NCBI GenBank assembly: GCA_002269645.1
Contig: NIVC01004536.1
Span: 34,579-77,442, forward strand
Direction of reading: 5' to 3'
DNA length: 42,864 bases
Origin: Macrostomum lignano
Taxonomy: Eukaryota
Shown here: positions 10,719 through 34,246 of the stretch, in pieces
Numbering within the stretch: position 1 is the stretch's first letter
Layout of the letters: each line of letters begins with the position of its first letter
Notes under the pieces: model-generated
The model's database searches: none
Told to the model about the DNA's origin: nothing
Seen by the model: only the letters and a program-made list of their open reading frames with translations
Position numbers and translations under genes: made by a program

Positions 10719-13700
10719 CTACATTGGTTCGCTAGTCGTCGACTTGCCGCGCTTGTTCCCCGCGCTATCGTCGCGACGCTCGCCACTGGCTCTGAAATCA
10801 TCGCCAGTGTGAACAGCGGCCGAGCACAGCTGGTGCATCCGCAGGGCGACGTGAACCCACAGTTCGAGCAGCTCGCACACAGTCAGCAGAGAGATGCCGC
10901 ACCACAGGCCCAGGATGCCTGACAAATGGGGCGTTCGGTTGAAAATTGATCAAATCGACCAAGTCGATATGGGCATGTGGTGCCCGAGATGGCCAGATCG
11001 ATCCTCGCTCCAGTTCGATTCTGCGGTGTTGCCCTCATTAATGTGGGGTTTGCGGGCACCGAATTTGGACCTACACACACACAGAATTAGTGTGCGTGCC
11101 TGTCTGGTATGTTTGTGCGCATGCGTTCTCTGGGTTTGCGAACGGACCTTGCTAGCTGTGAAACGGACCAACTTTAGATTTAATTTAGATTTAGATTTAG
11201 GAGCTTCAATGAACCCCTGGACTAGCAGTGACGTCAGCGGATGGCCTTGGTAACTGTCGAGATTATCACTTGTGCGCAGGGGCGTCGCCATGATTTTATG
11301 GTGGGGGGACAAAGCCAAGAATTCAACATGTACATGTACATGACTAAATTCGTGCATTTCCATTATTTCAAGAATCGTGTTGTCAGCCATAATTTTGGCG
11401 CCGCAGGTACTCATTTTGGCGTTGCAGGCACTCATTTTAATGCCATAGGCACCATTTTGGCGCCGCAGGCACATTTTAGCGCCGTAGGCGCTATATTTTG
11501 GCGCCCTGAAGAAAAATTATTGATTACCACGAGTCAAAAGGTGGGGTGGGGGGGGGAAAGTATTGGCATGTCCCCCCATAGCTTTTACTGGGGGGACATG
11601 CCCTCCCTGTCTCCGTCCGGTGGTGACGCGCCTGCTTGTGCGCATGGTTTTATAAGCAGTCATTTTCTTTCAGTACAGTGTCCGTCATAGGTAAACTGTG
11701 CTTGCTCCCAATTCACAAACCTCCCATATCGGCCAGCAAGTTCTTGACCGGGTAGGCCTCCTCTTCGATTTTCTCTTCGCCTAGGGGCTCGGACGCGGAC
11801 ACCGACACCATGGCCAGGCGGTCCTGCAGGACGCTCATCTCGTAGTCGAATCTGGTCAGATTAGCTGTCAGCTTGGCTGTTCCGCGAAAGTTTCGAGTCA
11901 GGGCCAGAGCGCTTAGGTAGGCGGAGTACAGGCTCACTGGGCCGCGGAATCGGCTGACGGAGTTGGGGTAGCCGAACCTGCTGGCCAGGCCGCTCAGGAA
12001 TTTTAACAGAGTGTCGCGACGAATGTTCGGCCACGTGTTGGCCACTTGGCTGACTTTGAACTCGAGGGTCTCGCAAGGCAGCTTGCAGCGGCTTCGGGCC
12101 TCGCTACGGTAGCTTTTCAGCAGATTTAGCTGGCGAATATAGCACTGGTCAGTGGCGTACAAGTTCTCGATGTCAGTAGTGTTAAAGCAAATCGGGTATT
12201 TGGCGTACAGCTGCTCGGGGATGGGCAGAAATGTTGGCAGGCAGCTGCAGTTTTCGGCGAATCTATGTAGCACAAACTCGTTGAAGCAGTCCTGCAGAGT
12301 GCTTGCTTTGAATTTCATCTTCCTTCGCATTGGTCCCCTGCAGTTTTTTGTTCTTGTTAAAACATCTTTATCATGTAATTGCACAAGCGATTCAAACAGA
12401 TTTACCTGAATTTGCTGTAGCTCTGAAATAGGTCCCTTATAATATCTGTCTTGATAGTCCAATTCGAGGCCTCAATTGGTCCGGTAAACAGCGAGTCCAT
12501 CCGGTCGCTGATGGAGTTCGGGTACGTATTGATTTAAAAAAGTGCCTGATGTAAAATCAGGCATGGTTGATAATTGACAATGCAGGAGGGATGCGTTAGT
12601 GCATTAGTGTATCCAATATTTGTAAGTGGGGCGCACCAGTGTCCAGAATCTAGACCCACTTGGACTGGGTACTCACAGTACTTTGTCGCTCAGGCTGGCA
12701 GGTGTCCAGGAGTCAAGCATATACGTTACTGGCATAACTTCACGAAGGCACTCTCTGACTGGTGGCTTTGAGTACCTGACAGTTCTATCGTATCGCAGTT
12801 TCAGCTTGGTGTGCTGCGCAGGCATGACCTCCAGAGCGTTCGCTGCCCAAGGGAATGTGCCTTCCGGGACCGCGATCACCTAACAGTGTAAGGGAGCGGA
12901 TGGTATATATTAATCAAATTCAGGGAGATGTGAACAACCAGGGCGCAATCCAAGTAGTCCAAGCATTCGCAAAGGGTGTACAACAGCCCTGACTTGTCAA
13001 GCGTATCGATTTCGTGTTGTCTTTAGGGTTGGCGTAAGCAATGGTCGTGTTTTTCATTCTACTTATCAAGAAGCGAAAGCCACCTTTATCGCAGAACTTT
13101 CGCTGCCACCACCGCCTAGCACAACATTGGCCAACTTGTTGGCCTGGCGGTAAACTCCGCCAAACGAATCAGTAGCATCGCTGAACAGTTGCACTTGAAA
13201 GATAACATCGGCCACTTCACTTGAGCTGAGGCCACGTAGCAGTGGCTCCTTCAACAGTCGCTGGCAGACGCCCAGTTCTGGCTGCAGTACCGACTGGAAA
13301 TTCGATGGACCGCACGACTGGCCGTTAAACTCGCACTTGATCAGGCCGTCGGCCAGGTCGACACCGAACTGTCGGGCCAGCGGTGCGCTACCAACTCGAG
13401 CGCGCACCGATCCCGTCACGGCTGGACTGGCCTTGTCTGGGAGCCGGTCGGTTGGGTTTTATAGGATCGATGAATTCACCCAAATGAAGCCAAAGTCAAG
13501 TTGCTAATTGAAGGACCAATGTGCTATTTCTATTGCATCAATGAATAAATGCAGCTCACTCACAGCACGGCTTCACCGTACAAGCTTCAAATAGGATGGT
13601 ATTTTCGGCTTCGTTTAAATAGAAGCAGCCCGGTTCTGTAGATTTGGCCACTGTTTCGCGACTGAAATAGTCGAGTTTGGATTTCACATTGGGGACAAAG

Positions 13701-16700
13701 TAATATCAGATATATTGAATAAATGGCGAGATTTGGCTTTATATAAAGGACTGGGAGGCGTGGTTCGGTTCCTATCAAAAGGACTGGGAGGTGTGGTTCG
13801 GTTCCTATCAAAAGGACTGGGAGGTGTGGTTCGGTTCCTATCAAAAGGACTGGGAGGTGTGGTTCGGCTCCTATCGAAAGGACTGGGAGGTGTGGTTCGG
13901 CTCCTATCGAAAGGACTGGGAGGTGTTGTTCGGCTCTTATCGAAAGGACTGGGGGTGTGGTTCGGCTCCTATCGAAAGGACTGCATGGGAGGTGTGGTTC
14001 GACTCCTATCGAAAGGACTGCATGGGAGGTGTGGTTCGACTCCTATCGAAAGGACTGCATGGGAGGTGTGGTTCGACTCCTATCGAAAGGACTGGGAAGT
14101 GTGGTTCGGCTCCTATCGAAAGGACTGGGGGTGTGGTTTGGCTCCTATCGAAAGGACTGGGAGGTGTGGTTCGGCTCCTATCGAAAGGACTGGGAGGTGT
14201 GGTTCGGTTCCTATCAAAGGACTGGGAGGTGTTGGTTCGGCTCTTATCAAAAGGACTGGGAGGTGTGGTTCGGCTCCTATCGAAAGGACTGGGGGTGTGG
14301 TTCGGCTCCTATCGAAAGGACTGCATGGGAGGTGTGGTTCGACTCCTATCGAAAGGACTGCATGGGAGGTGTGGTTCGACTCCTATCGAAAGGACTGGGA
14401 AGTGTGGTTCGGCTCCTATCGAAAGGACTGGGGGTGTGGTTTGGCTCCTATCGAAAGGACTGGGGGTGTGGTTTGGCTCCTATCGAAAGGACTGGGAAGT
14501 GTGGTTTGGCTCCTATCGAAAGGACTGGGGGTGTGGTCCAGCTCCTATCGAAAGGACTGGGGGTGTGGTTTGGCTCCTATCGAAAGGACTGGGGGTGTGG
14601 TCCAGCTCCTATCGAAAGGACTGCATGGGGAGGTGTGGTTCGGCTCCTATCGAAAGGACTGGGAGGTGTGGTTCGGCTCCTATTAGCTAATTAGCTAACT
14701 GAAAGGTAAAGCATCACGAACACGTAAGCATTTGAGCCATTGTTGCCTGGCGCCAACTGATACAAGGTGTCCGCCATGGCGTGAACACCCCTGCAGTAAT
14801 TGGACTCATTGCTGAGTTCGTAGTCCGGAGTTTGCAGAATCAGTTGCACTATTGATTTGTCTGAAATTTTGCAAGTGAGCACGCAGAGTAGCTCGTACTC
14901 GAAATACATCCCACCGACGTTTGGCCGACGTATACCGTTAATGGAAATGTACTACAAATAAAAACCATCGTTTACCCGTGACATCGAGTGAATCTTTGTT
15001 TGCTGAAACAGAATTTTTGTTTGCTGATTCAACATCAGAAATTTTGACTTGAATAAACTTGAATTCACTGACTCAAAATTGTTTACACTGAACTTGAGGT
15101 TGCAGACCCAGTTAAATAATGCTTTGAAGTGGTACTTCTGCTATTTGTGAAGAAGAAATTAGCCTACTCCTCAAACGGATTCGATCGCTCCCAATGAACT
15201 TTCAAAGTAGGTTAAATTCATACAGGATGTTCCGCTTTACATTTTTAATTCTAAGAATCTTGAGAGCAGTCTTTGGGAGCTGCTGGAAGTAACTTTAGTG
15301 ACAAACATATCCCAAACCTTAATCAAAATTAGAAACGTAGTGTAACCTGAATTTTTGGCAGTCAAATTGTGGTAGCCAGAGTAATATTTCTATTTCTTGC
15401 ATTGCAATCCATATTTCGATTCTGAAAGGGAAATTGCAGATCAGAATGCAACCAACTGGAAAACATCGAGTCCCAGTCGTGGTGAATCTCCGGTAGTCGC
15501 ATCGAGCCGTTCTCCACCCGCCGTTTTGTATCCGCCCAGATCAGGCAGGCTCGACCGGAGGCCGTGACATTCAGGCAACCGCTGTAGCGGGCCGCTTCCA
15601 GAACCTCTGTGTCGTCGCTAGCGCCGCTCGCTGTACAGTCGTACTCTGGAGGCGCAGCTGGGAAATTTCACCGCCATAATTGGTATTAGTGACGTTTTTA
15701 ACCATAGAAAAATTATTGAATTCTAGAGTATCTATGGTCAATATTTATAAGGTTAAAAAACCTGAAGAGCACCAAAAAAACACCAAAAGAACAGACAAAG
15801 ATTGTACCTAATCTACAGATATCGGAACCCCCACATACATGTAAGCGGGGGTATGGGGGGGGCGCAGTCCCCCTATATTTACCATAGACAGTAAAATTTT
15901 GAGTAGAGACAGTGAGAAGTGACAGTGAGAAACAGACAGACAAACAAATAGAATCAGTGAGGGTTGCAACTTCAACTTAAACTTGGAGGAAGACTTGGCG
16001 TATGACCTGCGCACTGCACGCAGGAGGACCCGTGGCGTCCGTTGAGCCTACATTGAATCTCCTTTCTGAGAGGATCAGTGTTTCCGCAAAGAAGAGGATG
16101 CGCATGGCGGTCAACGGTGAGACTAACACTGTGAAAATCCCGTTTGAGGACCTTCGGGTTAACTTATGCGCTAATGGAGAGACTGTCATCATTACTTGGG
16201 AATGATTTTTTGCTGGCTTGTTGCTATGACCCAACTGCTATGACTATGACTATTCCGATTGTCTTTATTCCTATTCCTACTTACTCCCAGTTTTCATTCG
16301 AGATGTTAAACTATGTTTTACGACTTAAAATGCACGGTTTTTTGTTTGATTCAACGCTCCCAATTTGTTGCAATTTGTTGCAACCTGTTTGGTTCATACA
16401 GAGGGAATAGGGTTCATATAATTGGCCTCGTTTTCAGCTTTGATATATCATATAATTGGCTCCTTTTTGAGTCACGATATATGAGACCAGACCGTAGACA
16501 ATAAAAAATTGAATAATGTGTTTTTGGAGGTTAACTGTAGATTAATAGTCTATCGAGCGATTAGTAGTACAACGAACTAGCACTAGTGGACCTTGATATT
16601 GTACTTTCTGTTTAAATCGAGGCAAGACAAGGCTACTCACGACAGAACGGAATATTGCAAGGCGATACGGAGAGGCCACGTGCTGGGTCCTCATAGAAGC

Positions 16701-19700
16701 AGATCGGTCCCTCCAGGAAGCGAGTCATCTTGCTTCCGTACGGCACGAAGATTTTCGTGTCCTCCCAGGCTGGGTTCAAATTAGAATTACAAGTTAGTTT
16801 TAGAAAGGAATTTTATTAAGCCGTATGAAAAGTCTGATTTAAGTGCTTCAACTGATAATCAGAACAACGGAATCAGTTATTCAAAACAAGAATCACCTTA
16901 TCCTGTTTTTTGCTATAATGGAGCATTGCGGGGAATTCCCATGGTCGGGTATACTCACCAAAGATTGGCTACAAAGGTTACCCAACGCCTGTTAGTATTT
17001 GTCGGTAAAACGCAGGGACTAAGCTCTTAGAGACAAGGGGGTAAACAGTGCATAAAAACGCAAACAATCATAATTTGGCACGCAACGGGCCAGGGCAGAA
17101 GAAATGGGGAGATGGATGCAGCTGGTGAGGGTTGCGCAGACGGCTGGGGGGTTGGCGTAGATGGCTGGTGGGCAGACGGCTGAGGGGTTGGTGCAGACGG
17201 CTGGGGGGTTGGCGTAGATGGCTGGGGGGCAGACAGCTGAGGGGTTGGTGTAGACGGCTGGGGGTTGGCGTAGATGGCTGGGGGGCAGATGGTTGGGGGT
17301 TGGTGCAGACGGCTGGGGGGTTGGCGTAGATGGCTGGGGGGCAGACGGCTGAGGGGTTGGTGCAGACGGCTGGGGGGTTGGCGTAGATGGCTGGGGGGCA
17401 GACGGCTGAGGGGTTGGTGCAGACGGCTGGGGGTTGGCGTAGATGGCTGGGGGGCAGACAGCTGAGGGGTTGGTGCAGACGGCTGGGGGGTTGGCGTAGA
17501 TGGCTGGGGGGGCAGATGGTTGGGGGTTGGTGCAGACGGCTGGGGGGTTGGCGTAGATGGCTGGGGGGCAGACGGCTGAGGGGTTGGTGCAGACGGCTGG
17601 GGGTTGGCGTAGATGGCTGGGGGCAGACGGCTGAGGGGTTGGTGCAGACGGCTGGGGGTTGGCGTAGATGGCTGGGGGGCAGACAGCTGGGGGTTGGTGC
17701 AGACGGCTGGGGGTTGGCGTAGATGGCTGGGGGGCAGATGGTTGGGGTTGGTGCAGACGGCTGGGGGGTTGGCGTAGATGGCTGGGGGGCAGATGGTTGG
17801 GGTTGGTGCAGACGGCTGGGGCAGACGGCTGGGGGTAGGTGCAGACGGCTGGGGGGTTGGTGCAGACGGTTGGGGGGGCTGGGGGGTCGATGCAGACGGC
17901 TGGGGGTAGGTGCAGACGGCGGGGGGTTGGTGCAGATGACTGGAGGGTTGGTGCTGACGACTGGGAAGTTGGTGCGGACGACTGGAGGTGGGTCGATGCA
18001 GACGCATTGGCAGATAGGGGGTAAGAGTGTCACCTAATCGATAGTTAAAGATTCCTTGTTCATCGGTGCAGCTGAACCCAAGTAAAACAGTTGAAAATAC
18101 TCAAACTCTCAAAGCTGACTGAAGTGGCAAAAACTTACCAAAGGTTATTAGAGTCAAACTAAAATTGATCAAAATATCGATCGAGAATAAATACTTGAAA
18201 TAGATTTGTTCATACCAACGTTTCTAACTTTGTAGACGCTGACTGAGGCCTCTCCCCCGCACCATTGGTTGAAGTCTCCCGGACAGGGCGAATCGCAGAA
18301 GTCGTCATCGATTCCTTCAGACACGGGCTCGCTACCGCAATAGCAGGATGACCTTCTGAGTGCCATGTGGGTGAAGTTTCGGTTGTAACAGCACTCCAAG
18401 CACACGTCGACTGTCAGCAGCGTGATGGTCAGGGCGAAACAGCTGTAGGTGAAGTGCTTTCTACTCTCACTCTCTCTGAAGCAGCCGGACTCCAATTTCA
18501 GTGGCACTTAATGGGATCAAGTATGAAAATAATAAGCAAAAATCTGTATTTACAAATTTGTAAAAAAATTAAAACGCGGTCATCACGATACCCCTTAGAA
18601 TACAGCTTCGAAACTCTCCTATAGATTTTACAAAATTTGAGAGCGATCATAATAATTATTTATTACACCTGCTCCAATTGGGCCAGATGTGCAACCGACA
18701 GCTCAGCCGCAGCTATTGCGCGGCGCATCTGAAGGCTGCGTACGGCTGTTCAGTCCAAGGACTGGGTGGTCGCCACACACACCCTCAATTACCCCAGCTA
18801 ATGCTGGCACTCATTTTACAGCTGGGTGAACTGAAGCAATGCAGAGTTAAGTGTCTTGCTCAAGGACACAAATTGCTCCAGTGGGAGCAGGAATCGAACC
18901 CCCGACCGATCTTCAAGTCGTGAGTCCGACGCTCTAACCTCTAGGCTACAACCCCCCTAGTGAGAGCGAACTAGTCCTGTTCCATTGAGTGTACCTCGTC
19001 ACGTATAGATTCAGTGCAATTAGCATTGCTACACCATCTCATTTTGTACTATTTTACCCAATAATGGCTAGTCAAGAATGGACTCTAGCAAACTAAACTG
19101 TGAGTTTTTAATATCGTACCTGTGGCGTACGGATTGATATCTTTCATTGTCAGTCCTTTTGCTTGGCGACACCGCGCGTCGCCATCAGAGTAGTTTAGCG
19201 CCAGGATCCTATCAGCCAAGGAGTTCAAGCCCTTGGATTTTAGGCTGTTCGCAGCCTGGTTCCAGGCCAGACACGGGGTCTCGAACGCGTACGGCTGTGC
19301 GGGCGCACTGCTCGATTGCGGCCTCACTTGAACGCTGTCGGTGTACAGAGGCACCGCGCTTCTGTCTCCACTGTACTCGCCTCCGCCGATGGTGAAACGG
19401 CAAGTGGAAAACTGATCTGGAAATGGTATGAGCATCGATGCTAAAGGTTACCAAACCTTAGCACTCTAAAGTGTAGGGTTCTAGAGCCACTTTTCCGACT
19501 TCCGTTCCTCCCTGAGACTTTGACTCCCCCCGGTCTGTGCTACTCGTACAGAATATACTCATAAAGCTCCATTCGAAGCGAAATTCTTTCAATCATTTAA
19601 AATACTTTTCCGAGGATGGATGAACATAATTAAGGAATCTGAGTCGAATTCTCAAGGCTTAGATTTGCAATCCATAACATTTTTTAATCCATTAAAATGT

Positions 19701-20542: not shown

Positions 20543-20605
20543 TGCCTTTACTGAACTACGAGCGTATCTGTGTATTTTTATTCTATCAAAGGCAAGAGGC
20601 TGTGA

Positions 20606-24766: not shown

Positions 24767-25325
24767 GAATAGAATAGAATATAATAGAATAGAATAGAAT
24801 AGAATAGAATAGAATAGAATAGAATAGAATAGAATAGAATAGAATAGAATAGAATAGAATAGAATAGAATAGAATAGAATAGAATAGAATAGAATAGAAT
24901 AGAATAGAATAGAATAGAATAGAATAGAATAGAATAGAATAGAATAGAATAGAATAGAATAGAATAGAATAGAATAGAATAGAATAGAATAGAATAGAAT
25001 AGAATAGAATAGAATAGAATAGAATAGAATAGAATAGAATAGAATAGAATAGAATAGAATAGAATAGAATAGAATAGAATAGAATAGAATAGAATAGAAT
25101 AGAATAGAATAGAATAGAATAGAATAGAATAGAATAGAATAGAATAGAATAGAATAGAATAGAATAGAATAGAATAGAATAGAATAGAATAGAATAGAAT
25201 AGAATAGAATAGAATAGAATAGAATAGAATAGAATAGAATAGAATAGAATAGAATAGAATAGAATAGAATAGAATAGAATAGAATAGAATAGAATAGATT
25301 AGAATAGAATAGAATAGAATAGAAT
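24767..25325 (+). repeat. (AATAG)n pentanucleotide microsatellite
   Basis: About 110 near-perfect units. Confidence 0.99.
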
Positions 25326-25969
25326 ATCCCTCCCTCTATGCCTACGCTTTAATTCGTTGACACATCGCAGGCCATATACGCTTAGATTAATTTACAGGCT
25401 ATCGACCCTCAATTTTTACCGGTGTTTCTGGTGGGAGCAATTAAGGGAGATCCGGTCTGACAGTTATATTTTTAATAGTTTTTTAAAATCGTCTGATATT
25501 ACAGTAGATTGAAAAATTCTAAAAAATGGGAATTAACTAAAACAGGGTATATAAATTCTGTGGAAGGAGTTCCTACATTGTTTAAATGATCAAAGTTTTT
25601 TTATACACTATCTTTAGCGAACTATAACGATATAGTTTATAGAACGATAAAAGACACTTTCAAACCGATTTTTAACAATAATTTAACAATTAACAATAAA
25701 TAGTTGAAAAATAGTAATCACAGCAAAAATATTGACAAACAAAGGCAATATCAATATCATTTAAATAAACAAAAGCTTTGAAAAGCTTATAAAAATGTTC
25801 GTGTGCATTAAAAATATTAGAGAACAAAATATCTGAGGTTGCAATAATTTGACTTCGTATACCTTTCGTAGTTTAGAATGATTCAATATTTTCTCAAGGC
25901 TGTCTGTTATTAAAAACACAACAACCATTTTTGTTATTCTCTATGTTTTAATATTTGTCTTACTACAAC

Positions 25970-28900
25970 TCAAAAGCGGCTGCTTTCAACTCCACCGTCT
26001 TCATCAGCAACTTCACCGCCATTGTTGGCATCGTCTTTCATCGATGGCGGCGCTGTTGGCAGCTCCGGTACGGCGTACGCAGCCCCGGGGCCGTCGTGTC
26101 CGCTGGCGCCCCTGTCAGAGCTGCCGCGCCGCTGTTTGTCCCCAGCGCAGAACTGCTTCAGCGTTAGAATTACGTAGACTGACAGCTCGATCAGCTCGCA
26201 CACGGTCAGAATGGAGACGCCGCACCAGAGGCCCAGGATGCCTGTGTTCGAGCCGTTGAATGCAGGTGCTAGGATATACTTTTATCGCTGTTTTCTCAGC
26301 TAATAATCTAATAATAATCTCAGGAGGGCTGTTAGCACCCATGGGCGAAAGCATAGCCTAGTGGTCTAGTGGTTTTGGCTGGATTCCAAGTGCAGTCAAA
26401 TTAATTTCTGCTCGTGCAATGAACGGCCTTGATGGCCAACCCCCCAAGGCGCAGTGAAGTGTAGGTGCCTAAAGATATGAATAACGTTAGCGCCGCTGTA
26501 CACTCCTGTGTGAGTGTGTGCCTGTGCGTATGACTGCGTACGTATCCGCGCGCTTGTGTGCCTGCTCGGGGGAGTCGGCGGAATGGGCAGCAATGCCTCT
26601 CACCAGGGTTGTGACAATGTCGCTTAAGTGCTCCAGGGTGCACACAGGCCCTGTCTCTAACCAAGATTGGCACCCAGGGGCACCGCCTTTGGTGACACCG
26701 TCCCATGACCAGGGGTGAGGTAAGGTACAATAATTCTGCCCATCCCGCTGACGCCGACAGGCACTTGCCCTGACTTTCACATCATCAGGCATGTACTCTC
26801 TTTGTGCCCTTGGGGGTTGGCCACGATCGGTGTGAATCGCACAACGACCTCTCCGGCCAATTTTTTTTTGTACTTCCTTTAGGCGAATTGATCAGATTTA
26901 TGAAACTACGTAATTAGAAACATATATACAGAAGAGTTACTGAAACTCTTGTATCCAGGCAATATCTGCGAAATTACGTACTATAACTGTGTTGCGAAAC
27001 TGTGGAAAGTAAATTTAAGCGCTCACCGCCCATGTCCGCCAGCAAGTTCTTAATTGGATAGGCCTCTTCCTCCAGGATGTCTTCGCCAAACATTTGAGCC
27101 GACGAGACCGACACCATGGCCAGCTGGTCCTGCAGCGTGAGCAGCTGGTAGTCGAAGTTCATGAGTTCAGTTATGTTTTCGCTCAAACTCCGGTACCGAA
27201 GATAGGTCGAATAGATGACACCCGGACCTCTTAGAGACTTTACTCGATTCGGATAGCCGTAGGTTTTGGCCAGATTTCTTAAGAAACCCTCCGACACCTG
27301 CCTCCGAACGTTCGGCCAGGGAAAAGAGTTCTGGCTGACCGTGTACTTTCTTGTCTCGCAAGGCGGCATGCAATGGTCCCGAGCTTCAACTCGGTAAGTC
27401 TTCACCCTCTTCTTCTGTTGGATGAAGCATTGGTCAGTTTTGTACAAATTTTCTATGTCTGTTGAGTTGAAGCAGATGGGATATTTGGCAAATAGCTGCT
27501 CAGGAATGGGTAGGAAAGTCGGCAGACAGCGGCAGTTTTCGGCGAATCTGCGCAGCACGTACTCATTGAGGCAGTCCTCCTGGGTGCTTGTCTGGAACGT
27601 CACTTTCTGCTTTGTTGAGCTCCTAAAAATAATATTGTTGCCAAGTTGCTCCATGCGAGTTTACACTGTTGGGGTGATACAGCAGAAGTACACGCAGACA
27701 ACGACACTTACTTCATGCCGTTATAGCTAATAACCAGTTGCTTCATCAAGTCAATCTTAGCAGTCCAATTTTCTGCATTTTCAACAGCCCAAAAGGTGGT
27801 TTCCATCAAGGCCCTAAAAAGTTTTGCTACAAGTTAAAAAATTACATCGGAATCAATCTCTTGAAACAGCTCGAAATGCTTACGTCACATTTGATGGCAG
27901 GCCAGCAGGCTTCCAATAGTCTAGAACGTACGTGACAGGCGGTGCGGCCTTGCTGCACTCCAGCGATGGCTTTGATAGTCGGGTTGTCCTGTCGAGACGC
28001 ACCTTGAATTCCGACTTTTGAGACTTGACAACTCCAAAGGCTTGCGATATCCATGGAAACGTGCCGTTTGGTACGATGACCACCTGCATTTATTGCGTTT
28101 GTTCTCGGCTTAGTTTGGCTAACAATAATATTCGCTTAATTTGATATTATAACTGTGATTAGGTCATTACGTCAAAAGCACGGTTGCCTGCTCTGCTTGA
28201 ATCGCCCAGCTCGTTCAAGATCGCCTTCGACGCGTCTTGCGCCTGCTCTGGACCGATGCCGTCGGAATCGGTGGCGTCGGTGAACAGCTGAACAGCCAGG
28301 CTGGCTTCTTTCAGTTCTGGCAGGCTCAAACCTGTAATAAATGGCTCTTTCATGAACTTATAACAGACACCGCTCTCTGGGTGTAAGACCTCCTGAAAAT
28401 GGTTGGCTGTGCACTGCCAGCCGTAGAAGTCGCAGTCAATCAAGCTGACGTCGAGGCTGGGACCAAACTGGCGAGCCAGTTCGGCTGTTCCAATGTTGTT
28501 TCTGACGATGCCAGGGACGCTGGGACTGGTCTCCACTGAAGTGAGTGAGTAGAAATTAATGTCTCGGTGCATTCTCCGGCCCGCGGGTGACATGCAACCC
28601 CGCAGAGCCTCTCTATCCGGCCCTCGGGTCCTTTGAAACTTCAAAATAGCAATCCGGCCCGCTCAAGGTTGATGTCTCTTCTCTTCTCTCCCTCTCTCTC
28701 TTTTCCCTCCTCTCTCACCTTCTCTCCCCCTCTCCTCTCTCCTCTCTCCTCTCTCCTCTCTCTACTCTCTTCTCTCTAACCTCTCCCCTCCCTCCCCTCC
28801 CCTCTCTCCACTCTCATGTCTCTACCCTCTCCTCTCTCCACTCTCCTCTTCTATTATCTTCTATCCTTTCTCTAATCTCTCTTCTCTCTTCTCTCATCTC

Positions 28901-31900
28901 TCATCTTCCATCCCATCTTCTTTCCACTCTCATTGAGGCAAAACAGTTTGCTGACCCCTGGTGTAGTATTTCCAAATTTTGACTGAATTTACCTTTTGAA
29001 CTAAAGTTGAACAAACATATTTGTTAGTGCAGATGTAATCAAAGTAAGGTTTTTAGACACAGTTGGCGACCTCACCGCAGGATTCGATAGCGCAAGTCTC
29101 AAAGTGAATTTCACTGTCTTCCTCGTTAACATAGAAACATCCGGGAACCAACGACGAGATTAGTGTGCTTCGGCTGGGTTGATGGGGAGTTTTTGAATTT
29201 GTAGCTCGTACAGGAATCCAAGCTGGATAATAATTATCACAGGTATTTCATTGAAAAAAATTAGCTGGGGAGCTTACCTGGAGCCAACCCGGTTCGTGCC
29301 AGTCTCATCGTAGTAAGTGGCATCGTACAGGACGTGGGCCGCTCTGCAGTAGTTCGTGCGATTGCTTATCGCGTAGTCAGTCGTCAAGATGATCATCTGA
29401 TCGATTGAGTAGTCTGGGCAAAATATGACAATTTTAGTTGTATTGATGATTGATAAATTTTTATATTGGTTTTTTGACAACGGCACTGAAAAACTCACAT
29501 CGGAATGGAAAATTCCAAGAAATCAAATCTGAGTTTGCCAGGCTAAGCGTCCGCTTGGCTATGGCAGTCTTCACGTCGTCCCACACCATGCACTCCCGAC
29601 CGGAGTTGGTATAATTCAGGTTGCCTGTGTACTTTGCTGACTGCTTCTCCGCGACGTCGCCGGAGCTGCGCACCACGCAGTCGTAGGTTCCCGAGGCGGC
29701 TGCGGATGAAGCAATGAGAAAGTTAAATTTGCAGATAGGCGAAAGCATATGAGCGAAACTTGTTTTTAGTCTGAAGGACCTTAGCAACTGGGATGATTTT
29801 TTTTATTAGAGGCCGGGGGGTTGTGTGCACCCTGGCGCACTTTAAGCGACATCAACACACAACCGGCGAGAGGCATTACTGCCCATTCCGCCGACTCCCC
29901 TGAGCAGGCACACAAGCGCGCGGATACGTACGCAGGCCCACACTCACACAGGAGTGTACAGCGGCCCTAACTTTATTTATCGTTAGGCATGTACACTTCA
30001 CTGTGCCTTGGGGGGTTGGCCCTCGAGGCCGTTAATTGCACGAGCAGAGCCAAGCTGAGATTCCAATTTAGTCCCAGATTATTGTGACTGCACTTGGAAT
30101 CGAGCCTGGGCCGCTGGCACACGAGAGCAGCTGCGCCAGACCACTGGACTACGGCCCCTCATTAGAGCAAGCTCAGATAACGCAATGCCGCATACAGCAG
30201 AACGGGATGTTGCAGTAGGACAGCGCCAGTCCATTGTGCGTATCATTGTAGAAACAGTACGGCCCAATCAGATAGTCGGCCAGGAAGCCTCCGTAGGACG
30301 CGAATACAGGCAAGTCGGCTGAAAAAAGAAAGTCAATTATGATTAAAGTAGAGGGCCAGGGAAACTTTGTTTCTTAGATAATATAAGCAAAAATTATACG
30401 ACAGTAGTAGATACGTAATACAGCTTCATTGATTTGGGAACTTTATTTATGGAATAGAATTTAGGAAGAATGGAATTAGCAGGCACTGTAGAGTTGGTAG
30501 AGGTCCCTCCTGTGCCTTCCTTCCTGTGCCTTCCCTCCTGTGCCTTCCCTCCTGTGCCTTCCCTCCTGTGCCTTCCCTCCTGTGCCTTCCCTCCTGTGCC
30601 TTCCCTCCTGTGCCTGTGCCTTCCCTCCTGTGCCTTCCCTCCTGTGCCTTCCCTCCTGTGCCTTCTCTCATGTGCCTTACCTCCTGTGCATGTGCCTTCT
30701 CTCAGTGCCTTACCTCCTGTGCCTTCCCTCCTGTGCCTTCCGTTCTTGCCCTTAACTTAGGCACCGTGCCGAAATGAAGGGCTCGAGAAAGAGTCTACAG
30801 AGGCGAGAGATTATGCAACCGCGCCGCTTTTAATATGCAAGACAAGGCTCCCTCACCCGTGGGCCGGATCTGCTTCACGCTCATGTACAAGCCGTCTCCT
30901 CCGCAGGTTTCATCCGCATCCGCGGCCTGTCCGGGACACGAGTACTTGCAGTTACTCGAGTCTGCCGTGTTACCAGGCACAATTCTGTTACTGCAGAAGC
31001 AATCATAGTACTGCAACCCGTAGTACTTGAAGTTGTTTTTGAAGCAGCATTCGGTGCACTTTTCGACGTTCATAGTGGGAATCTGGCCGCCGAAGCAGCT
31101 CACAAAAAGTCTGTCCGATGCGCTGTCCTGATAGCAGATTGGATCCTTGTCTAGGTTGATCAGGTAGGCTGAAATTCATTCGATCAGATATAAGCGTGTT
31201 ATAGCAGTGAATAGAAGTAACCAACTCCAGTAAGAAACGCTATTATGATACGAAACAAGCGCATTTCATTTTTGCGCTGGTCTTCAACAGTGTACGAAAC
31301 ACCGGATGGCCAAGAGTTCACAACAACTGCATTGAAATGTAAACCTACGCCTTCGGCGACATCATCCCACAACCAGCACTTTGGCAGTCTCTCATACGAG
31401 CTACACACGCTCACACAGGGTGTACAGCGGGCTTCTGACTTTTCAACCGTCAGGCAGGTACGCTCTCTGTGCCTTGGGGGTTGGCCCTGACGGCTGTGAA
31501 TCGCATGAAAACCCGCCGGCCAATTTTCGTGCACAAGTACCAAATAAATTTGTTTGCGCACGGGAATCGAACCAGGGGTCGTGGCGCGAGAGTTAGACAC
31601 AATTTTCGCTGAGTAACTCCGCTCTATTGCGCTGCTTTTAATAGCATATTTTACCAATTCTGGCTCTGGTTAGTACAAGAAAATAACATTTCATAACCTG
31701 AAACTTTCGTATCTGGGAAATGAATTTCATAAAGAAAAAACCGTCAATACTTTGAGTGAGCGAGCGTTCCTGGCATGAGCAGACAGCCCCAGAAACTCAC
31801 TGGTGAAATTGTCGAATTCCTCCAGCGGCAGGCCAGGTGGAGTCCGGCACCTGGCGTCATTATTTGAGAAATTATAGGACAGAATCTTGTCCGACATGTT

Positions 31901-34214
31901 CTTGAGGCCGGCCTCTGCAAGCAGACGGGCGGCCTCGTTCCATGGCATGCAGGGCAGCTCCGTGACGTAGTTCGGCTGCGTCAGATTGCTTGGTGGCAGT
32001 GTCAGCCTCAGGCTGTTGCCGAACACGGGCACCGAGCTCTTGTCTCCGGTGTATTCGGTTCCGTCCAGGGTAAAGCGACACTCGCTGGTGTTTCCCGCTG
32101 AAAGACAAAACGTGGGAAATTATGGTGTAGTAGCTTTTCTCCTGCACTTCTTTCCTTCTTTGTAGTGTACCGGCATTCTTGCATTGTAATGAATAGAATG
32201 AAGTGCATGGGATGATTCCTGAATTAATTAGGAGAAAGCACTTTTAAAATTCGAAGCATTCTAATTGCTTCAAATGAATGCACCGTCATGCATCTAGCTT
32301 AAATATTGATTTTACAGCAACAGCAACAAGAGACGCAACCCAGAGAAGCAAAGTCAAGCGGCCAGGGTGCGTCAGACGGCGTCGCAAAGCAGGCAGTCTC
32401 CGCGTATCGACGGGTTCGGGCCTGGCCCCGCCTAAATGGGCCCTGGAAGGGGAGCAATAGAATGTAGAGGCTGGGGGCAGCAGCAGGATCACGTGACCCG
32501 CCAGTCATCGCCCGCGCAGGATGTTGGGACGGGCGTCGAGAAATACCTTGAGTTACGGCACTTACAGACCCATCCGCACCCTCTGCAAACTAAAGAACTC
32601 GTTTTCACTATCAAGATTCAACTAGTGCCTTGTTAGTTGGCTACGTATTTTGCTAGGAGGGCTTTGAACACTGCCTCCCATTCCACTGACCTAGAGCATG
32701 CCCACGCACACGGATACGTAAACGATTTTCACATCACCAGGCAATGAACAAAAAGTCGCAGGTCAAGACTCAATTTCTGTGCATTTTGTGTCTCAAATAA
32801 TTGCGAACCCTTACTGAGTGTGCTACTGGTCTTAAACAATGCATCTTATTAACACTTTAGTCTTAACCAGGGGATTCGTTACCGGGGGGGGGGACATTAC
32901 AATATCTTGTCCCCCCGTCCCACCTTGTGAACCGTTATCTGAAATCAGTAAGTTTGCGTTCAAAGCGCCAAAATTAGTGCTAAAAACGCCATGTAATTCC
33001 CCCCACCTGTGCCTCGAGTATTTATAACTCAAACATTAACTTGTCCCTCAGAATGAGTTTCCTCACCGATGCCTTTGTTGTTGAGCTTGGGCATCAGAGC
33101 AGCTTCCACAGAATACACCATTCTAGCGAATGCGTACATTGGCGTGCTCAGGTAGACGTCGGATTCCTTGAAGTAGCTCAGCCTGGCCTGGCAGGTGGTG
33201 TTGCAGTCTTTCTTCAGTCCGCGCAACTTCGGCATGTCATCCTTGAGCTTGAATGGTTCGTAGGCCTTACTCATCGCGATCGGATTCTTCGGGCAGATGT
33301 ACACATCCGGGAACTCGTACGGCAGCGAGGTGGCCAGGCTTGTGAGCAACGGCGTGCTGGTGAATCTGTGAGTAGATTGGAATTCAGCCGAATGAAATCG
33401 GACGCACGGGCTACTTGATATTTGTTTAACTGAACAAACGGTTAAAGCAATCTTGATATTATCTACATCGTCAACGGATTTGTTTAACTGATCAAACGGA
33501 TAAGTGGATGACTCATCGTCAATGCTTCTTAGTTGATATTTGTTTAATGAAGTTGTTTATGTTGAATAATGTACTAATGACGTTTGTATATCGTATAAAT
33601 TTCTTTCAATCCAAAGCTAAAACTGAGGGCTATGGGCACCCTGACGCATCGCTCTCAGCGAAATTGTCCCACAGCCAGCGGCAATTCTGCCTTTTCTGCT
33701 GACTCCTGAGCACATGCAAGCCCGCCAATACTGTACGTAGGAATGAACTCATACACGATCTCTTCAGGGTGTACAGCAGCCTTAATCTTCTAATCGTCAG
33801 GCATTAGAAGATTATCTGTACACTCTCTGTGCCTTGGGGGAATTGCACGACAACCCGCTCGCCTCCCCGCTGAGTCTTCAGACCGCCCTGCAGCTATATA
33901 AGTCAGGTAAGACAAGTCAACTCTGGGCTGGCCCTCAAGGCTGTGAACCCTTCGGCCAATTTTCATTGCCCCAAATGAATTCACCTGTCAATCAAGGTGA
34001 ACAGGTGGTAAGCGAAGCCGCCATAAGTGCCGAGCAGAAAGGCGATCCAGATTGTGCGGCCAAAGGCCGTCGACTGGGCGGCGAAGCGTCCCAGGCCGTG
34101 GGCGGTGGTGTACTGGGCGAATTCGCGGAACGAATTGGCGATGCCGAAGCCGCCAGCCTCTGCTTCTGCTGTACCGCTTGCGTCTGCGGCGCTCTGCTTC
34201 TCAGTGTCTGCCAT
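25970..34214 (-). CDS. DEG/ENaC channel subunit, paralog B, with kringle-WSC-kringle extracellular insert; 12 exons, 1042 aa
   Basis: Exons 5' to 3': 34214-33985, 33365-33067, 32097-31801, 31168-30857, 30318-30196, 29699-29499, 29413-29278, 29173-29076, 28535-28171, 28083-27884, 27622-27027, 26241-25970. All junctions are GT-AG and phase-compatible, giving 3129 nt. Shows TTAHGLGR, TM1, FPDVYICPKN, CDFYGWQC, thumb cysteines, WPN, and LLADMGGILGLWCGVSILTVCE with a G-V-S filter. Confidence 0.92.
26352..26646 (+). mobile_element. tRNA-headed SINE, family 2, copy 2
   Basis: TAGCCTAGTGGTCTAGTGG (A-box-like) followed by GATTCCAAGTGCAGTCA. The body is the reverse complement of copies 1 and 3. Confidence 0.7.
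28565..28960 (+). mobile_element. hAT/Charlie (MER58-like) non-autonomous element with an internal CT-rich tract
   Basis: Right TIR GTTTGCTGACCCCTG (28946-28960) and CCGGCCC subterminal motifs. It is homologous to the copy at 22840-23080, which starts with CAGAGGTCGGCAAAC. Confidence 0.6.
29076..29699 (-). other. Paralog B exons 6-8: kringle-2
   Basis: YDC...KYTGNLNYTNSGRECMVW, TNYCRA and VPGCFYVNEEDSEIHFETCAIESC supply six cysteines in kringle order. Confidence 0.85.
29826..30158 (-). mobile_element. tRNA-headed SINE, family 2, copy 3
   Basis: Colinear with 20606-20944 over ~330 nt; head GGGGCCGTAGTCCAGTGGTCTGG...GGCTCGATTCC. Confidence 0.78.
30196..30318 (-). other. Paralog B exon 5: kringle-1 C-terminal half
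   Basis: Hand translation DLPVFASYGGFLADYLIGPYCFYNDTHNGLALSYCNIPFC, with a strong (t)7cag acceptor and gtatgc donor; 123 nt, phase 1-1. Confidence 0.82.
30505..30740 (+). repeat. 14-bp minisatellite (CTCCTGTGCCTTCC) in paralog B intron 4
   Basis: About 16 units. Confidence 0.95.
30857..31168 (-). other. Paralog B exon 4: WSC domain
   Basis: PICYQDSASDRLF...MNVEKCTECCFKNNFKYYGLQYYDCFCSN...NCKYSCPG...TCGGDG. The exon is 312 nt, phase 1-1. Confidence 0.9.
31395..31620 (-). mobile_element. Related SINE copy (partial)
   Basis: B-box GGTTCGATTCCC on the minus strand and the shared body motif GGTGTACAGCGG...CTGTGCCTTGGGGGTTGGCCCT. Shorter relics of this body also occur at ~1065-1105, ~26760-26860 and ~33740-33965. 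Confidence 0.6.
31801..32097 (-). other. Paralog B exon 3: kringle-1 N-terminal half
   Basis: ECRFTLDGTEYTGDKS...PCMPWN...DARCR. The exon is 297 nt, phase 1-1, the same length as in paralog A. Confidence 0.72.
32362..32460 (-). mobile_element. Short 3' fragment of the same RTE family (intron of paralog B)
   Basis: The reverse strand encodes LLPFQGPFRRGQARTRRY and is near-identical to ~21790-21860. Confidence 0.7.
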
Positions 34215-34246
34215 GCCTGCTGATTGAGGGGAAATGCCTGTCTTAG

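What the first reader, a model, noticed from the sequence alone, without database searches (positions are those of the whole stretch)
13564..32097. DEG/ENaC channels with a built-in kringle-WSC-kringle module in the finger domain
Seen: in both paralogs, six exons (A 19416-13564; B 32097-29076, 389 aa) sit between the post-TM1 FPDVYIC/first finger-helix exon and the exon that resumes the canonical fold (ARQFG...C-x-F-x-G-x-x-C). They encode two kringles and a WSC domain. Removing them leaves a normal ~650-aa channel with intact HG motif, TM1/TM2 and GxS filter. Established: the finger is the variable gating region of the family (ENaC GRIP/protease site, FaNaC peptide pocket, degenerin extra Cys-rich segments). 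Kringles bind proteins or lysine; WSC domains bind glycans and occur in Wsc1 stress sensors and polycystin-1; kringle plus WSC is the Kremen ectodomain pairing. Inference: this is a receptor-channel chimera gated by a protein or glycan ligand, or tethered to extracellular matrix for mechanosensing. I know of no characterised DEG/ENaC with this architecture, but I could not search.
Basis: partly seen in the sequence, partly recalled or inferred. Interest (0 to 1): 0.93.

Follow-up and report, generated by a model that had tools for sequence, protein, structure and literature searches.

The report
Flatworm sodium channels with kringle/WSC insert
Two neighbouring flatworm (Macrostomum lignano) genes encode DEG/ENaC sodium-channel subunits whose outer "finger" region carries a 389-residue receptor-like insert, a WSC domain nested inside one kringle-like domain followed by a second; this architecture is found only in this species' gene family and has never been described or tested.

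Summary
Both minus-strand genes splice cleanly: 13 exons each, all GT-AG, in frame. Model B is identical to GenBank PAA47210.1 of Macrostomum lignano. That annotation was built from RNA-seq, so the insert exons are in mRNA.

- **Domains.** WSC passes Pfam's cut-off in both genes. The kringles are very divergent and fall below Pfam's cut-off, but profile-profile comparison supports them (97%, E 1e-11; controls at most 4%).
- **Correction.** The layout is not kringle-WSC-kringle in series. The WSC exon sits inside kringle 1, between Cys3 and Cys4, and kringle 2 follows.
- **Origin.** Every module exon unit is phase 1-1 symmetric, which is the signature of exon shuffling.
- **Distribution.** A profile search of 1.84 billion proteins found the module only in about nine M. 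lignano DEG/ENaC paralog lineages. It is as conserved there as the channel core.
- **Position.** The insert aligns to the finger, just before the helix that precedes C-x-F-x-G-x-x-C.

Function is inferred. It is most likely a macromolecule-binding head that biases gating. The lysine-binding residues are absent, there are no furin sites, and structure prediction was inconclusive. I found no publication on this architecture.

The parts
35837..35876 (-). Gene B: 3' end of a 5'-UTR exon (true start further upstream, not determined). Donor G|GTGAGC, spliced to 34219.
   Evidence: It encodes the HRNFWQSGSPAAI extension that precedes the Met in PAA47210.1.
33985..34219 (-). Gene B exon 1 (ATG at 34214): N-terminus, HG motif, TM1.
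33067..33365 (-). Gene B exon 2: post-TM1 strand (FPDVYIC) and first finger helices. Ends in phase 1.
31801..32097 (-). Gene B exon 3 (phase 1-1): kringle-1 N-half, carrying Cys1, Cys2-x-x-W and Cys3 (ARCR).
   Evidence: hhalign aligns it to kringle columns 1-61, prob 90%, E 1.5e-6. Splice sites.
30857..31168 (-). Gene B exon 4 (phase 1-1): WSC domain with 10 Cys, nested in kringle 1.
   Evidence: Pfam PF01822 41.5 bits against a cut-off of 27.8. The module profile finds multi-WSC proteins.
30196..30318 (-). Gene B exon 5 (phase 1-1): kringle-1 C-half (GPYCFY...YCNIPFC, Cys4-6).
   Evidence: hhalign aligns it to kringle columns 58-86, prob 95.7%, E 1.1e-8.
29499..29699 (-). Gene B exon 6 (phase 1-1): kringle-2 N part (YDC...YTG...C-x-x-W).
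   Evidence: Pfam Kringle 17.7-21.7 bits. hhalign for kringle 2: 96.8%, E 2.6e-10.
29278..29413 (-). Gene B exon 7 (phase 1-2): kringle-2 middle (NYCR, Cys3) plus a lineage-specific loop.
29076..29173 (-). Gene B exon 8 (phase 2-1): kringle-2 C part (PGCFY...ETC...SC).
28171..28535 (-). Gene B exon 9: the channel fold resumes (finger helix, ARQFG, CDFYGWQC, beta-ball).
   Evidence: Aligns to Aplysia FaNaC residues 170-246.
27884..28083 (-). Gene B exon 10: palm/beta-ball.
27712..27813 (-).
   Evidence: Present in PAA47210.1.
27027..27622 (-). Gene B exon 12: Cys-rich thumb, palm, pre-TM2.
25970..26241 (-). Gene B exon 13: TM2 with GVS filter, C-terminus, stop codon.
20238..20542 (-). Gene A exon 1: HG motif and TM1. 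The start codon at 20542 is provisional.
   Evidence: The near-identical copy on another contig has TAG at codon 6.
19847..20157 (-). Gene A exon 2: FPDVYIC and first finger helices.
19120..19416 (-). Gene A exon 3 (phase 1-1): kringle-1 N-half.
18216..18506 (-). Gene A exon 4 (phase 1-1): WSC domain.
   Evidence: Pfam PF01822 36.3 bits.
16641..16769 (-). Gene A exon 5 (phase 1-1): kringle-1 C-half.
15457..15657 (-). Gene A exon 6 (phase 1-1): kringle-2 N part. An alternative acceptor at 15645 is possible.
   Evidence: Pfam Kringle 21.9 bits on the isolated kringle 2. Splice sites.
14722..14860 (-). Gene A exon 7 (phase 1-2): kringle-2 middle.
13564..13661 (-). Gene A exon 8 (phase 2-1): kringle-2 C part.
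13084..13436 (-). Gene A exon 9: the channel fold resumes (ARQFG, CEFNGQSC).
12677..12879 (-). Gene A exon 10.
12406..12507 (-). Gene A exon 11: small exon homologous to B exon 11.
11721..12337 (-). Gene A exon 12: thumb/palm.
10719..10918 (-). Gene A exon 13: TM2 with GIS filter, stop codon.

Best explanation
**What it is (shown).** Two tandem paralogs of a Macrostomum lignano-specific DEG/ENaC subfamily. In this subfamily a 385-389 residue, disulfide-rich module has become an integral part of the extracellular finger. The module is a kringle-derived domain with a WSC domain nested in its Cys3-Cys4 loop, followed by a second kringle-derived domain. It was assembled by shuffling of phase-1 exons.

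**How it most likely works (inferred).** The subunits form FaNaC/ASIC-like trimeric Na+ channels. The module forms a rigid head on top of each finger and binds an extracellular macromolecule, most likely a glycan or glycoprotein. The binding would be through the WSC and the conserved kringle-1 surface, not through a lysine pocket. Occupancy of the head would move the finger helices on either side of it against the thumb and beta-ball. That would open the pore or bias its gating, in the way peptide binding in the FaNaC finger or the GRIP domain in the ENaC finger controls those channels.

The paralog series would then be a set of receptor-channels with different specificities.
For: **Architecture**
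- Clean GT-AG models for both genes.
- B is identical to PAA47210.1, whose annotation is derived from RNA-seq transcripts (PMC5730564).
- Pfam finds ASC split around the insert, and WSC above its cut-off.
- Kringle 1 with only the WSC exon removed matches a profile of 43 canonical kringles over Cys1-Cys6 at prob 97.4%, E 1.2e-11. Kringle 2 matches at 96.8%.
- The two halves of kringle 1 match complementary halves of the kringle profile.
- Reversed, column-shuffled and WSC control profiles give at most 4.3%.
- The module profile retrieves genuine multi-kringle proteins (E about 1e-13) and multi-WSC proteins.

**Integral and under constraint**
- The same module sits at the same site in about nine paralog lineages that are only 28-44% identical.
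- Mean pairwise identity is 0.28-0.40 in the module against 0.33-0.40 in the channel core exons 9-12.
- The Cys framework is conserved; B has 22 Cys in the module.

**Position**
- The insertion point aligns to about residues 175-180 of Aplysia FaNaC, in the finger.

**Pore**
- HG motif, the LGLWxG(I/V)S filter and the thumb Cys pattern are intact. FaNaC is the closest solved structure at E 2.7e-25.

**Receptor-like nature**
- The best hits in the PDB are prothrombin kringles and Kremen1 by sequence.
- By fold they are Kremen1 and the yeast Wsc1 sensor domain, TM-score about 0.55 normalised to the Wsc1 chain.
Against: - No functional or expression-pattern data exist, so the binding and gating steps are pure inference.
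- The kringles are below Pfam's gathering score.
- The AlphaFold models are of low to moderate confidence: pLDDT 61.8 for the module and 71.1 for kringle 2.
- Foldseek found no kringle for kringle 2 and nothing with E below 0.001 for the whole module.
- The canonical lysine-binding Asp residues are missing.
- The module is not more variable than the core, so there is no sign of the diversifying pattern expected of a fast-evolving receptor family.
- Paralog A is not in the GenBank annotation and its start codon is uncertain.
Confidence: 0.45

Rival explanations
1. Mechanosensory tether. The module anchors each finger to extracellular matrix, mucus or cuticle-like glycans, so that shear or stretch pulls on the finger and opens the channel. 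This would be a built-in version of the MEC-4/MEC-1/MEC-9 arrangement.
For: - The WSC domain is the sensor head of the yeast Wsc1 cell-wall mechanosensor, and Wsc1 (7pz2) is among the top fold matches, with TM-score 0.53-0.56 normalised to the Wsc1 chain.
- The module sits at the most exposed tip of the extracellular domain.
- The module is as conserved as the core rather than diversified, which fits a common matrix partner.
- From general knowledge, DEG/ENaCs include established mechanosensors.
Against: - No matrix partner is known.
- No expression in mechanosensory cells has been shown.
- About nine divergent paralogs is more than a single tether function would need.
- No experiment distinguishes this reading from gating by a soluble ligand.
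Confidence: 0.2
2. Intrinsic regulatory or structural cap. The module binds no external ligand. It acts as an autoinhibitory or stabilising lid, an assembly or clustering device, or a quality-control or trafficking domain, comparable to the ENaC GRIP domain or to the extra Cys-rich domains of degenerins.
For: - It sits in the same general place as the ENaC GRIP domain and the degenerin insertions (plus general knowledge).
- The most conserved stretch (WNxAARxL...RCRxPxGLPLxEF) is the kringle-1/WSC junction, which looks structural.
- The lysine pocket is lost.
- From the literature, Wsc1's WSC domain mediates clustering.
Against: - There are no furin-type R-x-[KR]-R sites anywhere in A or B, so a GRIP-like proteolytic release is not indicated.
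- Maintaining 22 Cys and about 390 residues in about nine paralogs is expensive for a passive cap.
- Kringle+WSC is a ligand-binding pair in Kremen.
Confidence: 0.25
3. Annotation or assembly artefact. The six exons belong to a separate Kremen-like gene nested in an intron of the channel gene, or they are joined to it only in mis-assembled transcripts.
For: - Short-read transcript assemblies can fuse genes.
- Several UniProt entries from an older annotation are fragments named after single domains.
Against: - The module has no start codon, signal peptide, stop codon or TM segment of its own.
- Its outer introns are both phase 1 and match the flanking channel exons in both genes.
- The same junctions recur in independently located paralogs only 28-44% identical.
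- An exhaustive search found the module in no protein that is not a channel.
Confidence: 0.02
4. Decaying or non-functional lineage-specific insertion. The genes, or at least paralog A, are pseudogenes or produce non-conducting proteins.
For: - A is absent from the GenBank gene set.
- The copy of A on contig NIVC01000342 has a stop at codon 6 of my model.
- The ratio of synonymous to non-synonymous differences between the recent copies is only about 1:1: 8 synonymous to 7 non-synonymous (one of them the codon-6 stop) for A, and 7:7 for B.
Against: - Thirteen exons and more than 1070 codons stay open in both genes at 43% identity to each other.
- All pore and fold motifs are intact.
- The GenBank set deliberately dropped transcripts that overlap repeats, and A's introns hold long tandem repeats.
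- The counts are too small to be informative.
Confidence: 0.06

Closest known systems
FMRFamide-gated Na+ channels (FaNaC; PDB 7yvb, 8on7) and ASIC/BASIC within the DEG/ENaC superfamily
   Same: They share the overall fold signature: the HG motif, the FP-x-V-x-IC strand, the C-x-F-x-x-x-x-C motif, the Cys-rich thumb and the LGLW-x-G-I/V-S-x-LT-x-x-EL TM2. FaNaC is the best solved-structure match, at E 2.7e-25 with the core profile. From the literature, the FaNaC ligand pocket lies in finger insertions.
   Different: No known FaNaC or ASIC has an autonomous extra domain in the finger; here 389 residues with three domains are inserted. Sequence identity to FaNaC is low, and word-based searches find no relatives outside M. 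lignano.
Kremen1/2 ectodomain (kringle-WSC-CUB; PDB 5fws/5fwt/5fww)
   Same: It is the only well-known protein that pairs a kringle with a WSC domain. It is the top fold match (E 0.013, prob 0.87) and among the top sequence matches, for both the kringle C-terminus and the WSC.
   Different: In Kremen the domains lie in series and a CUB domain and a single TM helix follow. Here the WSC is inserted inside the kringle, a second kringle follows, there is no CUB, and the host protein is an ion channel. The match statistics are weak.
ENaC GRIP domain (gating relief of inhibition by proteolysis) in the finger of the alpha and gamma subunits
   Same: It is a lineage-specific insertion in the finger that controls gating, in a comparable position between finger helices.
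   Different: There is no sequence or fold relationship. No furin-type sites are present in A or B. GRIP is a beta-rich insertion of about 80-100 residues, not a set of shuffled extracellular modules.
C. elegans degenerins (MEC-4/MEC-10) with extra Cys-rich extracellular regions, and their matrix partners MEC-1/MEC-5/MEC-9
   Same: They are DEG/ENaC channels with additional Cys-rich extracellular segments and a proposed link to extracellular matrix for mechanosensing (general knowledge).
   Different: The matrix-interacting modules (EGF/Kunitz) are on separate proteins, not fused into the channel. The degenerin Cys-rich segments are not kringle or WSC domains.
Yeast Wsc1 cell-wall stress sensor (WSC domain, PDB 7pz2) and the polycystin-1 WSC domain
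   Same: The WSC fold is shared: Pfam above cut-off, and Foldseek TM-score 0.53-0.56 normalised to the Wsc1 chain. In both cases the WSC sits at the tip of a membrane sensor.
   Different: Wsc1 is a single-pass sensor on a glycosylated stalk. The channel WSC here has two extra Cys (10 rather than 8) and is embedded in a kringle.

Membership tests
DEG/ENaC (Pfam ASC, PF00858) | Significant match to the family profile across the extracellular domain and both TM regions | tested here: met
   PF00858 at E 7.7e-52 (B) and 1.7e-44 (A), in two stretches split by the insert. The core profile against the PDB gives FaNaC at E 2.7e-25, then ASIC5, ENaC and ASIC1.
DEG/ENaC (Pfam ASC, PF00858) | N-terminal HG motif, post-TM1 FP-x-V-x-x-C strand, and G-x-S selectivity filter in TM2 | tested here: met
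   B has TAHGL at 37, FPDVYIC at 95 and GVSILT at 994. A has SAHGL at 62, FPDVYIC at 120 and GISLLT at 1023.
DEG/ENaC (Pfam ASC, PF00858) | Trimeric, amiloride-sensitive Na+-selective current | not testable with these tools
   This needs heterologous expression and electrophysiology.
WSC domain (PF01822) | Profile match above Pfam's gathering score, with the conserved Cys framework | tested here: met
   41.5 bits (B) and 36.3 bits (A) against a cut-off of 27.8, covering profile positions 3-82 of 82. There are 10 Cys in exon 4. The domain is also above or near the cut-off in paralogs P0006, P0007, P0135, P0004 and P0009.
WSC domain (PF01822) | WSC fold | tested here: inconclusive
   The AlphaFold module model has pLDDT 61.8. 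Foldseek places Wsc1 (7pz2) and Kremen at the top (prob 0.87-0.90, TM-score 0.53-0.56 normalised to the Wsc1 chain), but E is 0.01-0.3.
Kringle (PF00051) | Profile match above Pfam's gathering score (34.3 bits) | tested here: not met
   Native sequences score 17.7-21.9 bits, and only over the N part of kringle 2. After manual removal of lineage-specific loops, kringle 1 scores 31.4 bits (E 2.3e-7) and kringle 2 scores 29.9 bits (E 7e-7) over profile positions 4-79. Both remain below the cut-off.
Kringle (PF00051) | Homology to kringles by profile-profile comparison, with six Cys in the canonical order and the Y-x-G, C-x-x-W, (N)YCR and PxC(F/Y) motifs | tested here: met
   hhalign against 43 canonical kringles gives 97.4% (E 1.2e-11, columns 1-86) for kringle 1 without the WSC exon, and 96.8% (E 2.6e-10) for kringle 2. 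Controls give at most 4.3%. In the reverse direction, the module profile hits multi-kringle proteins at E about 1e-13.
Kringle (PF00051) | Kringle fold, with the 1-6, 2-4, 3-5 disulfides | tested here: inconclusive
   The AlphaFold model of kringle 2 alone has pLDDT 71.1. Foldseek found no kringle among its matches.
Kringle (PF00051) | Lysine-binding site (anionic Asp55/Asp57 after Cys3, aromatic pocket); this defines the lysine-binding subclass only | tested here: not met
   After Cys3 the sequences read RCRTPPG (kringle 1) and YCRAAHV (kringle 2) in place of CRNPDGD. The Cys3-Cys4 loop is interrupted by the WSC in kringle 1 and by a 30-40 residue insert in kringle 2.
Kremen family | Serial kringle-WSC-CUB ectodomain on a single-pass membrane protein | tested here: not met
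   There is no CUB match. The WSC is nested in the kringle rather than following it. The host is a two-TM channel.
ENaC GRIP-type finger insertion | Inhibitory tract flanked by furin/prostasin cleavage sites | tested here: not met
   There is no R-x-[KR]-R motif anywhere in A or B, and no sequence similarity to the ENaC finger.

The most novel reading that the evidence does not exclude
This would be the first ion-channel family in which a receptor-type ectodomain was grafted by exon shuffling directly into the gating finger, producing DEG/ENaC channels gated by a macromolecule (glycan, glycoprotein or matrix). The ectodomain is a WSC nested inside a kringle plus a second kringle, a domain-in-domain arrangement not otherwise described.

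The steps of assembly may still be visible among the paralogs. A divergent M. lignano lineage (A0A1I8G9S9 and A0A1I8GS09) appears to carry the two kringles without the WSC.
Probability: 0.3. Interest if true: 0.85.

Novelty: new variant of a known kind. Interest (0 to 1): 0.62.

Why it matters
How extracellular events are coupled to the DEG/ENaC gate is a long-standing question. So is whether any of these channels is opened by a physical tether. The finger is known to be the variable control region: protons and toxins act there in ASIC, peptides in FaNaC, proteases in ENaC.

Here nature has fused recognisable, separately foldable binding modules into that exact site. That gives a system in which the stimulus-receiving part can be expressed alone, put on glycan or protein arrays, deleted exon by exon (every unit is in frame) or swapped between paralogs. 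It can also be tested in an animal where RNAi and transgenesis already work.

The locus is also a clean example of phase-1 exon shuffling building a nested domain in a multi-pass membrane protein.

If the module proves to be only a structural cap, the finding shrinks to a lineage-specific curiosity.

Tried and rejected
1. **Remote searches with my spliced proteins.** I used identical substrings of PAA85180.1/PAA47210.1 and of paralogs instead.
2. **Adding gene A as per-exon fragments to the module alignment.** MAFFT misaligned the second half of the WSC, so I dropped it.
3. **Word-indexed homology searches.** They returned only M. lignano proteins. I could therefore not obtain close channel relatives without the module, and could not test whether they carry a phase-1 intron at the insertion site.
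4. **AlphaFold of the whole module and of kringle 2 followed by Foldseek.**
   - Confidence was low to moderate.
   - Kremen and Wsc1 came top for the module, but no match was significant.
   - No kringle was recovered for kringle 2.
   - Coordinates are not returned, so disulfide geometry and the nested topology could not be checked structurally.
5. **Hits P0028 and P0081, which seemed to span the kringle/WSC junction.** They are translated tandem repeats and are spurious.
6. **Counting synonymous and non-synonymous differences between the recent duplicate contigs.** There are only 14-15 differing codons per gene, which is too few to be informative.
7. **Literature searches.** Gene identifiers found nothing and architecture terms found nothing.
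8. **Locus look-up for the WSC-less paralog P0076.** It is not on record, so a skipped exon or a prediction error cannot be excluded.
10. **The 'CUB domain-containing' name of A0A1I8GR34.** Nothing in its sequence looks like a CUB domain, and its 84%-identical relatives P0076 and P0136 show none.
Full report
**Source and gene models**

The window is the end of contig NIVC01004536.1 of the Macrostomum lignano assembly GCA_002269645.1; it matches the fetched locus at 100% over 26.9 kb.

I took the six-frame open segments on the minus strand and aligned them exon by exon between the two paralogs. I then enumerated GT/AG sites. This gave two 13-exon genes in which every junction is GT-AG and the reading frame is continuous.

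- Gene B runs from 34214 to 25970 and encodes 1076 aa.
- Gene A runs from 20542 to 10719 and encodes 1081 aa.
- The two proteins are 43% identical.

From its Met, model B is residue-for-residue identical to GenBank PAA47210.1 (BOX15_Mlig026586g1). A 99% identical duplicate, PAA85180.1, lies on another contig.

The GenBank gene set of this assembly was derived from a genome-guided RNA-seq transcriptome (StringTie/TACO plus a de novo assembly, with ORFs called by TransDecoder). It was not predicted ab initio (PMC5730564). PAA47210.1 also carries a translated 5'-UTR exon, which I located at 35876-35837, spliced to 34219. The insert exons are therefore present in assembled mRNA.

**Check of the observation**

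The flanking landmarks are all present: FPDVYIC, ARQFG, C-x-F-x-G-x-x-C, the HG motif and GxS.

Pfam finds ASC (PF00858) split in two around the insert, at E 7.7e-52 for B and 1.7e-44 for A. It finds WSC (PF01822) above its curated cut-off in both genes.

One small exon outside the insert had been missed (B 27813-27712, A 12507-12406). It appears in PAA47210.1.

**Are they kringles, and how are they arranged?**

Pfam's Kringle model gives only sub-threshold matches.
- Native sequences score 17.7-21.9 bits, over the N part of kringle 2.
- After I removed lineage-specific loops by hand, the scores rose to 31.4 and 29.9 bits over the whole profile.
- The cut-off is 34.3 bits.

Hand-trimming is partly circular, so I ran a test that involves only one objective edit. 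For six paralogs I joined the exon-3 and exon-5 equivalents, removing nothing but the WSC exon. I compared that alignment with a profile of 43 canonical kringles. Those kringles were cut out of the multi-kringle proteins that the module profile had itself retrieved.

hhalign results:

| Query | Probability | E-value | Kringle columns matched |
|---|---|---|---|
| Kringle 1 without the WSC exon | 97.4% | 1.2e-11 | 1-86 (Cys1 to Cys6) |
| Exon 3 alone | 90% | 1.5e-6 | 1-61 |
| Exon 5 alone | 95.7% | 1.1e-8 | 58-86 |
| Kringle 2 | 96.8% | 2.6e-10 | 10-86 |

Reversed and column-shuffled kringle profiles, and a WSC profile, gave at most 4.3% and E of at least 0.01.

So the linear order is kringle-1 N-half, WSC, kringle-1 C-half, kringle 2. 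The WSC domain is nested in the Cys3-Cys4 loop of kringle 1. Kringle 2 carries a 30-40 residue insertion in the same loop.

In B the module has 22 Cys: 6 in kringle 1, 10 in the WSC and 6 in kringle 2.

The acidic residues of the plasminogen-type lysine-binding site are not there. The sequence after Cys3 reads RCRTPPG and YCRAAHV where a canonical kringle has CRNPDGD. These are best called kringle-derived domains. A lysine-binding function should not be assumed.

**Structure prediction was not decisive**

- The 390-residue module, with an 8-sequence alignment, gave pLDDT 61.8 and pTM 0.56.
- Its best PDB fold matches were Kremen1 (E 0.013, prob 0.87) and the yeast Wsc1 sensor domain (TM-score 0.53-0.56 normalised to the Wsc1 chain). 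Nothing had E below 0.001.
- Kringle 2 alone gave pLDDT 71.1. No kringle appeared among its Foldseek matches.
- By sequence, the module's best PDB matches are prothrombin kringles and Kremen1, the latter for both the kringle C-terminus and the WSC (E 0.002-0.02).

The most confidently predicted stretch, which is also the most conserved, is the centre of kringle 1 and its junction with the WSC (WNxAARxL...RCRxPxGLPLxEF). It is predicted to be helical, which is unlike canonical kringles.

**Origin**

Intron phases were computed from the models.
- The intron before exon 3 and the intron after exon 8 are both phase 1.
- Exons 3, 4 (WSC), 5 and 6 are each phase 1-1.
- Exons 7 and 8 are 1-2 and 2-1, so together they are also 1-1.

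This is the classical signature of extracellular modules moved by exon shuffling. It also explains how a WSC exon could be dropped into a phase-1 intron inside a kringle without breaking the frame.

A more divergent M. lignano lineage (UniProt A0A1I8G9S9 and A0A1I8GS09) matches both the channel core (E 6e-33) and the kringles but shows no WSC. If that is not a prediction artefact, the kringles arrived first and the WSC second. Its genomic locus could not be retrieved.

**Distribution and constraint**

I searched a profile of the module with HMMER against one representative per 50% cluster of about 15 billion proteins (1.84 billion sequences). Full-length matches were only M. lignano DEG/ENaC proteins and fragments of them. 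The next hits were unrelated multi-WSC and multi-kringle proteins, each matching only its own part of the profile.

With P0135 and the unannotated gene A, that makes about nine paralog lineages.

No protein that is not a channel carries the module. No channel outside this species carries it in these databases. Transcriptomes of other Macrostomum species do not appear to be in the databases, so the age of the insertion within the genus is unknown.

Among five full-length paralogs the module is as conserved as the channel core exons 9-12.

| Region | Mean pairwise identity |
|---|---|
| Kringle-1 N-half | 0.40 |
| WSC | 0.31 |
| Kringle-1 C-half | 0.39 |
| Kringle 2 | 0.28 |
| Channel core (exons 9-12) | 0.33-0.40 |

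This argues that the module is an integral part of the protein under purifying selection.

**Position in the channel**

A profile of the module-deleted cores matches Aplysia FaNaC (7yvb) at E 2.7e-25, and then FaNaC1, ASIC5, ENaC and ASIC1. The segment that straddles the insertion point aligns to FaNaC residues 170-246. This puts the module at about residues 175-180. That is directly before the helix that leads into the C-x-F-x-x-x-x-C strand, in the finger. The TM2 sequence LGLWxG(I/V)S is FaNaC-like.

**Mechanism**

Shown: the architecture, its presence in mRNA, its conservation, its position and the intact pore motifs.

Inferred: everything about function. I commit to the following reading. 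The module is a rigid head that binds an extracellular macromolecule, probably a glycan or glycoprotein, through the WSC and kringle-1 surface. Occupancy of the head shifts the flanking finger helices and so gates or modulates a Na+ channel. I put this at about 0.45.

The rivals are:
- a matrix tether for mechanosensing (about 0.2);
- an intrinsic regulatory or structural cap (about 0.25); GRIP-like proteolytic control is disfavoured because no furin-type site exists;
- decay or pseudogene status (about 0.06);
- an annotation artefact (about 0.02).

**Gene A**

A is intact in this window, but it is not in the GenBank gene set. That set excluded transcripts overlapping repeats, and A's introns contain long tandem arrays. 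The near-identical copy of A on NIVC01000342 has a stop at codon 6 of my model, so A's start codon is provisional. Its expression remains to be shown.

**Comparison with what is known, and novelty**

These proteins are members of DEG/ENaC by every sequence criterion tested. They are not Kremen family members: there is no CUB and the topology differs. They do not carry a GRIP domain.

I found no paper that mentions kringle or WSC domains in a DEG/ENaC channel, and none that mentions these gene identifiers. The one study that expressed M. lignano DEG/ENaCs in oocytes used three genes from another branch whose N-termini are unrelated (PMC9234716).

The sequences themselves are public as 'hypothetical protein' or 'WSC domain-containing protein'. 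I therefore rate this a new variant of a known kind. The finding is real, undescribed and experimentally tractable. So far it is confined to one flatworm and comes with no functional data.

Noticed in passing
window 21382-21470 (minus strand), about 1 kb upstream of gene A exon 1: An 89-bp fragment, 89% identical to the part of A exon 1 that encodes the HG motif and the start of TM1. It lies in an open frame that breaks off inside TM1, and is probably a remnant of a partial duplication.
   Followed up: partly
window 2137-7261 (+ strand): A GC-rich (about 0.6) neighbouring gene on the opposite strand, with long ORFs of 566, 172, 141 and 477 aa. The first ORF has a clear DUF4550 domain (PF15084, E 7e-26). 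The exons are separated by a (TAGT)85 array and a 17-bp x22 array.
   Followed up: partly
window 34247-35294: About 1 kb of (TGTC)n microsatellite (263 copies) fills the 5'-UTR intron of gene B, immediately upstream of its ATG. Similar 4-bp arrays lie at 40531-40765 (CAGG) and 42727-42864 (CTGT).
   Followed up: no
window 13745-14683 and 17118-17947: Long tandem arrays inside introns of gene A: 33 bp x28 in intron 7 and 57 bp x15 in intron 4. Both give spurious long ORFs. They may explain why A was filtered out of the GenBank gene set, which excluded transcripts overlapping repeats.
   Followed up: partly
window about 20598-20934 and 29819-30147; similar ORF fragments at about 26401-26730 and 33630-33750: A dispersed repeat of about 340 bp (86% identity between copies) occurs upstream of A, in B intron 5 and apparently at two more places. 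It is probably a short non-autonomous mobile element.
   Followed up: no
window 24767-25326: A (GAATA)112 microsatellite in the A-B intergenic region, which accounts for the AT-rich dip (GC 0.33).
   Followed up: no
L002 (NIVC01000342.1) 26108-27527 against window 20542-19120: The duplicate contig carries a second A-B gene pair that is 97-100% identical in the exons. Its A copy has TAG in place of TTG at codon 6 of my A model. Its B copy (PAA85180.1) is annotated as ending after exon 11, although exons 12-13 are present downstream.
   Followed up: partly
Paralogs elsewhere in the genome: P0002 (A0A1I8IQF7) against P0003/P0131; P0009: Some database isoforms or predictions lack individual module units in frame. 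P0002 joins exon 6 directly to exon 9 and so has no kringle-2 C part. P0009 lacks the kringle-1 C-half. Because every unit is phase 1-1, these could be real alternatively spliced forms or prediction errors.
   Followed up: no
P0076/P0136 (A0A1I8G9S9, A0A1I8GS09), not in the window: A more divergent M. lignano DEG/ENaC lineage has the two kringle-like domains in the finger but no detectable WSC. It may be an intermediate in the assembly of the module.
   Followed up: partly
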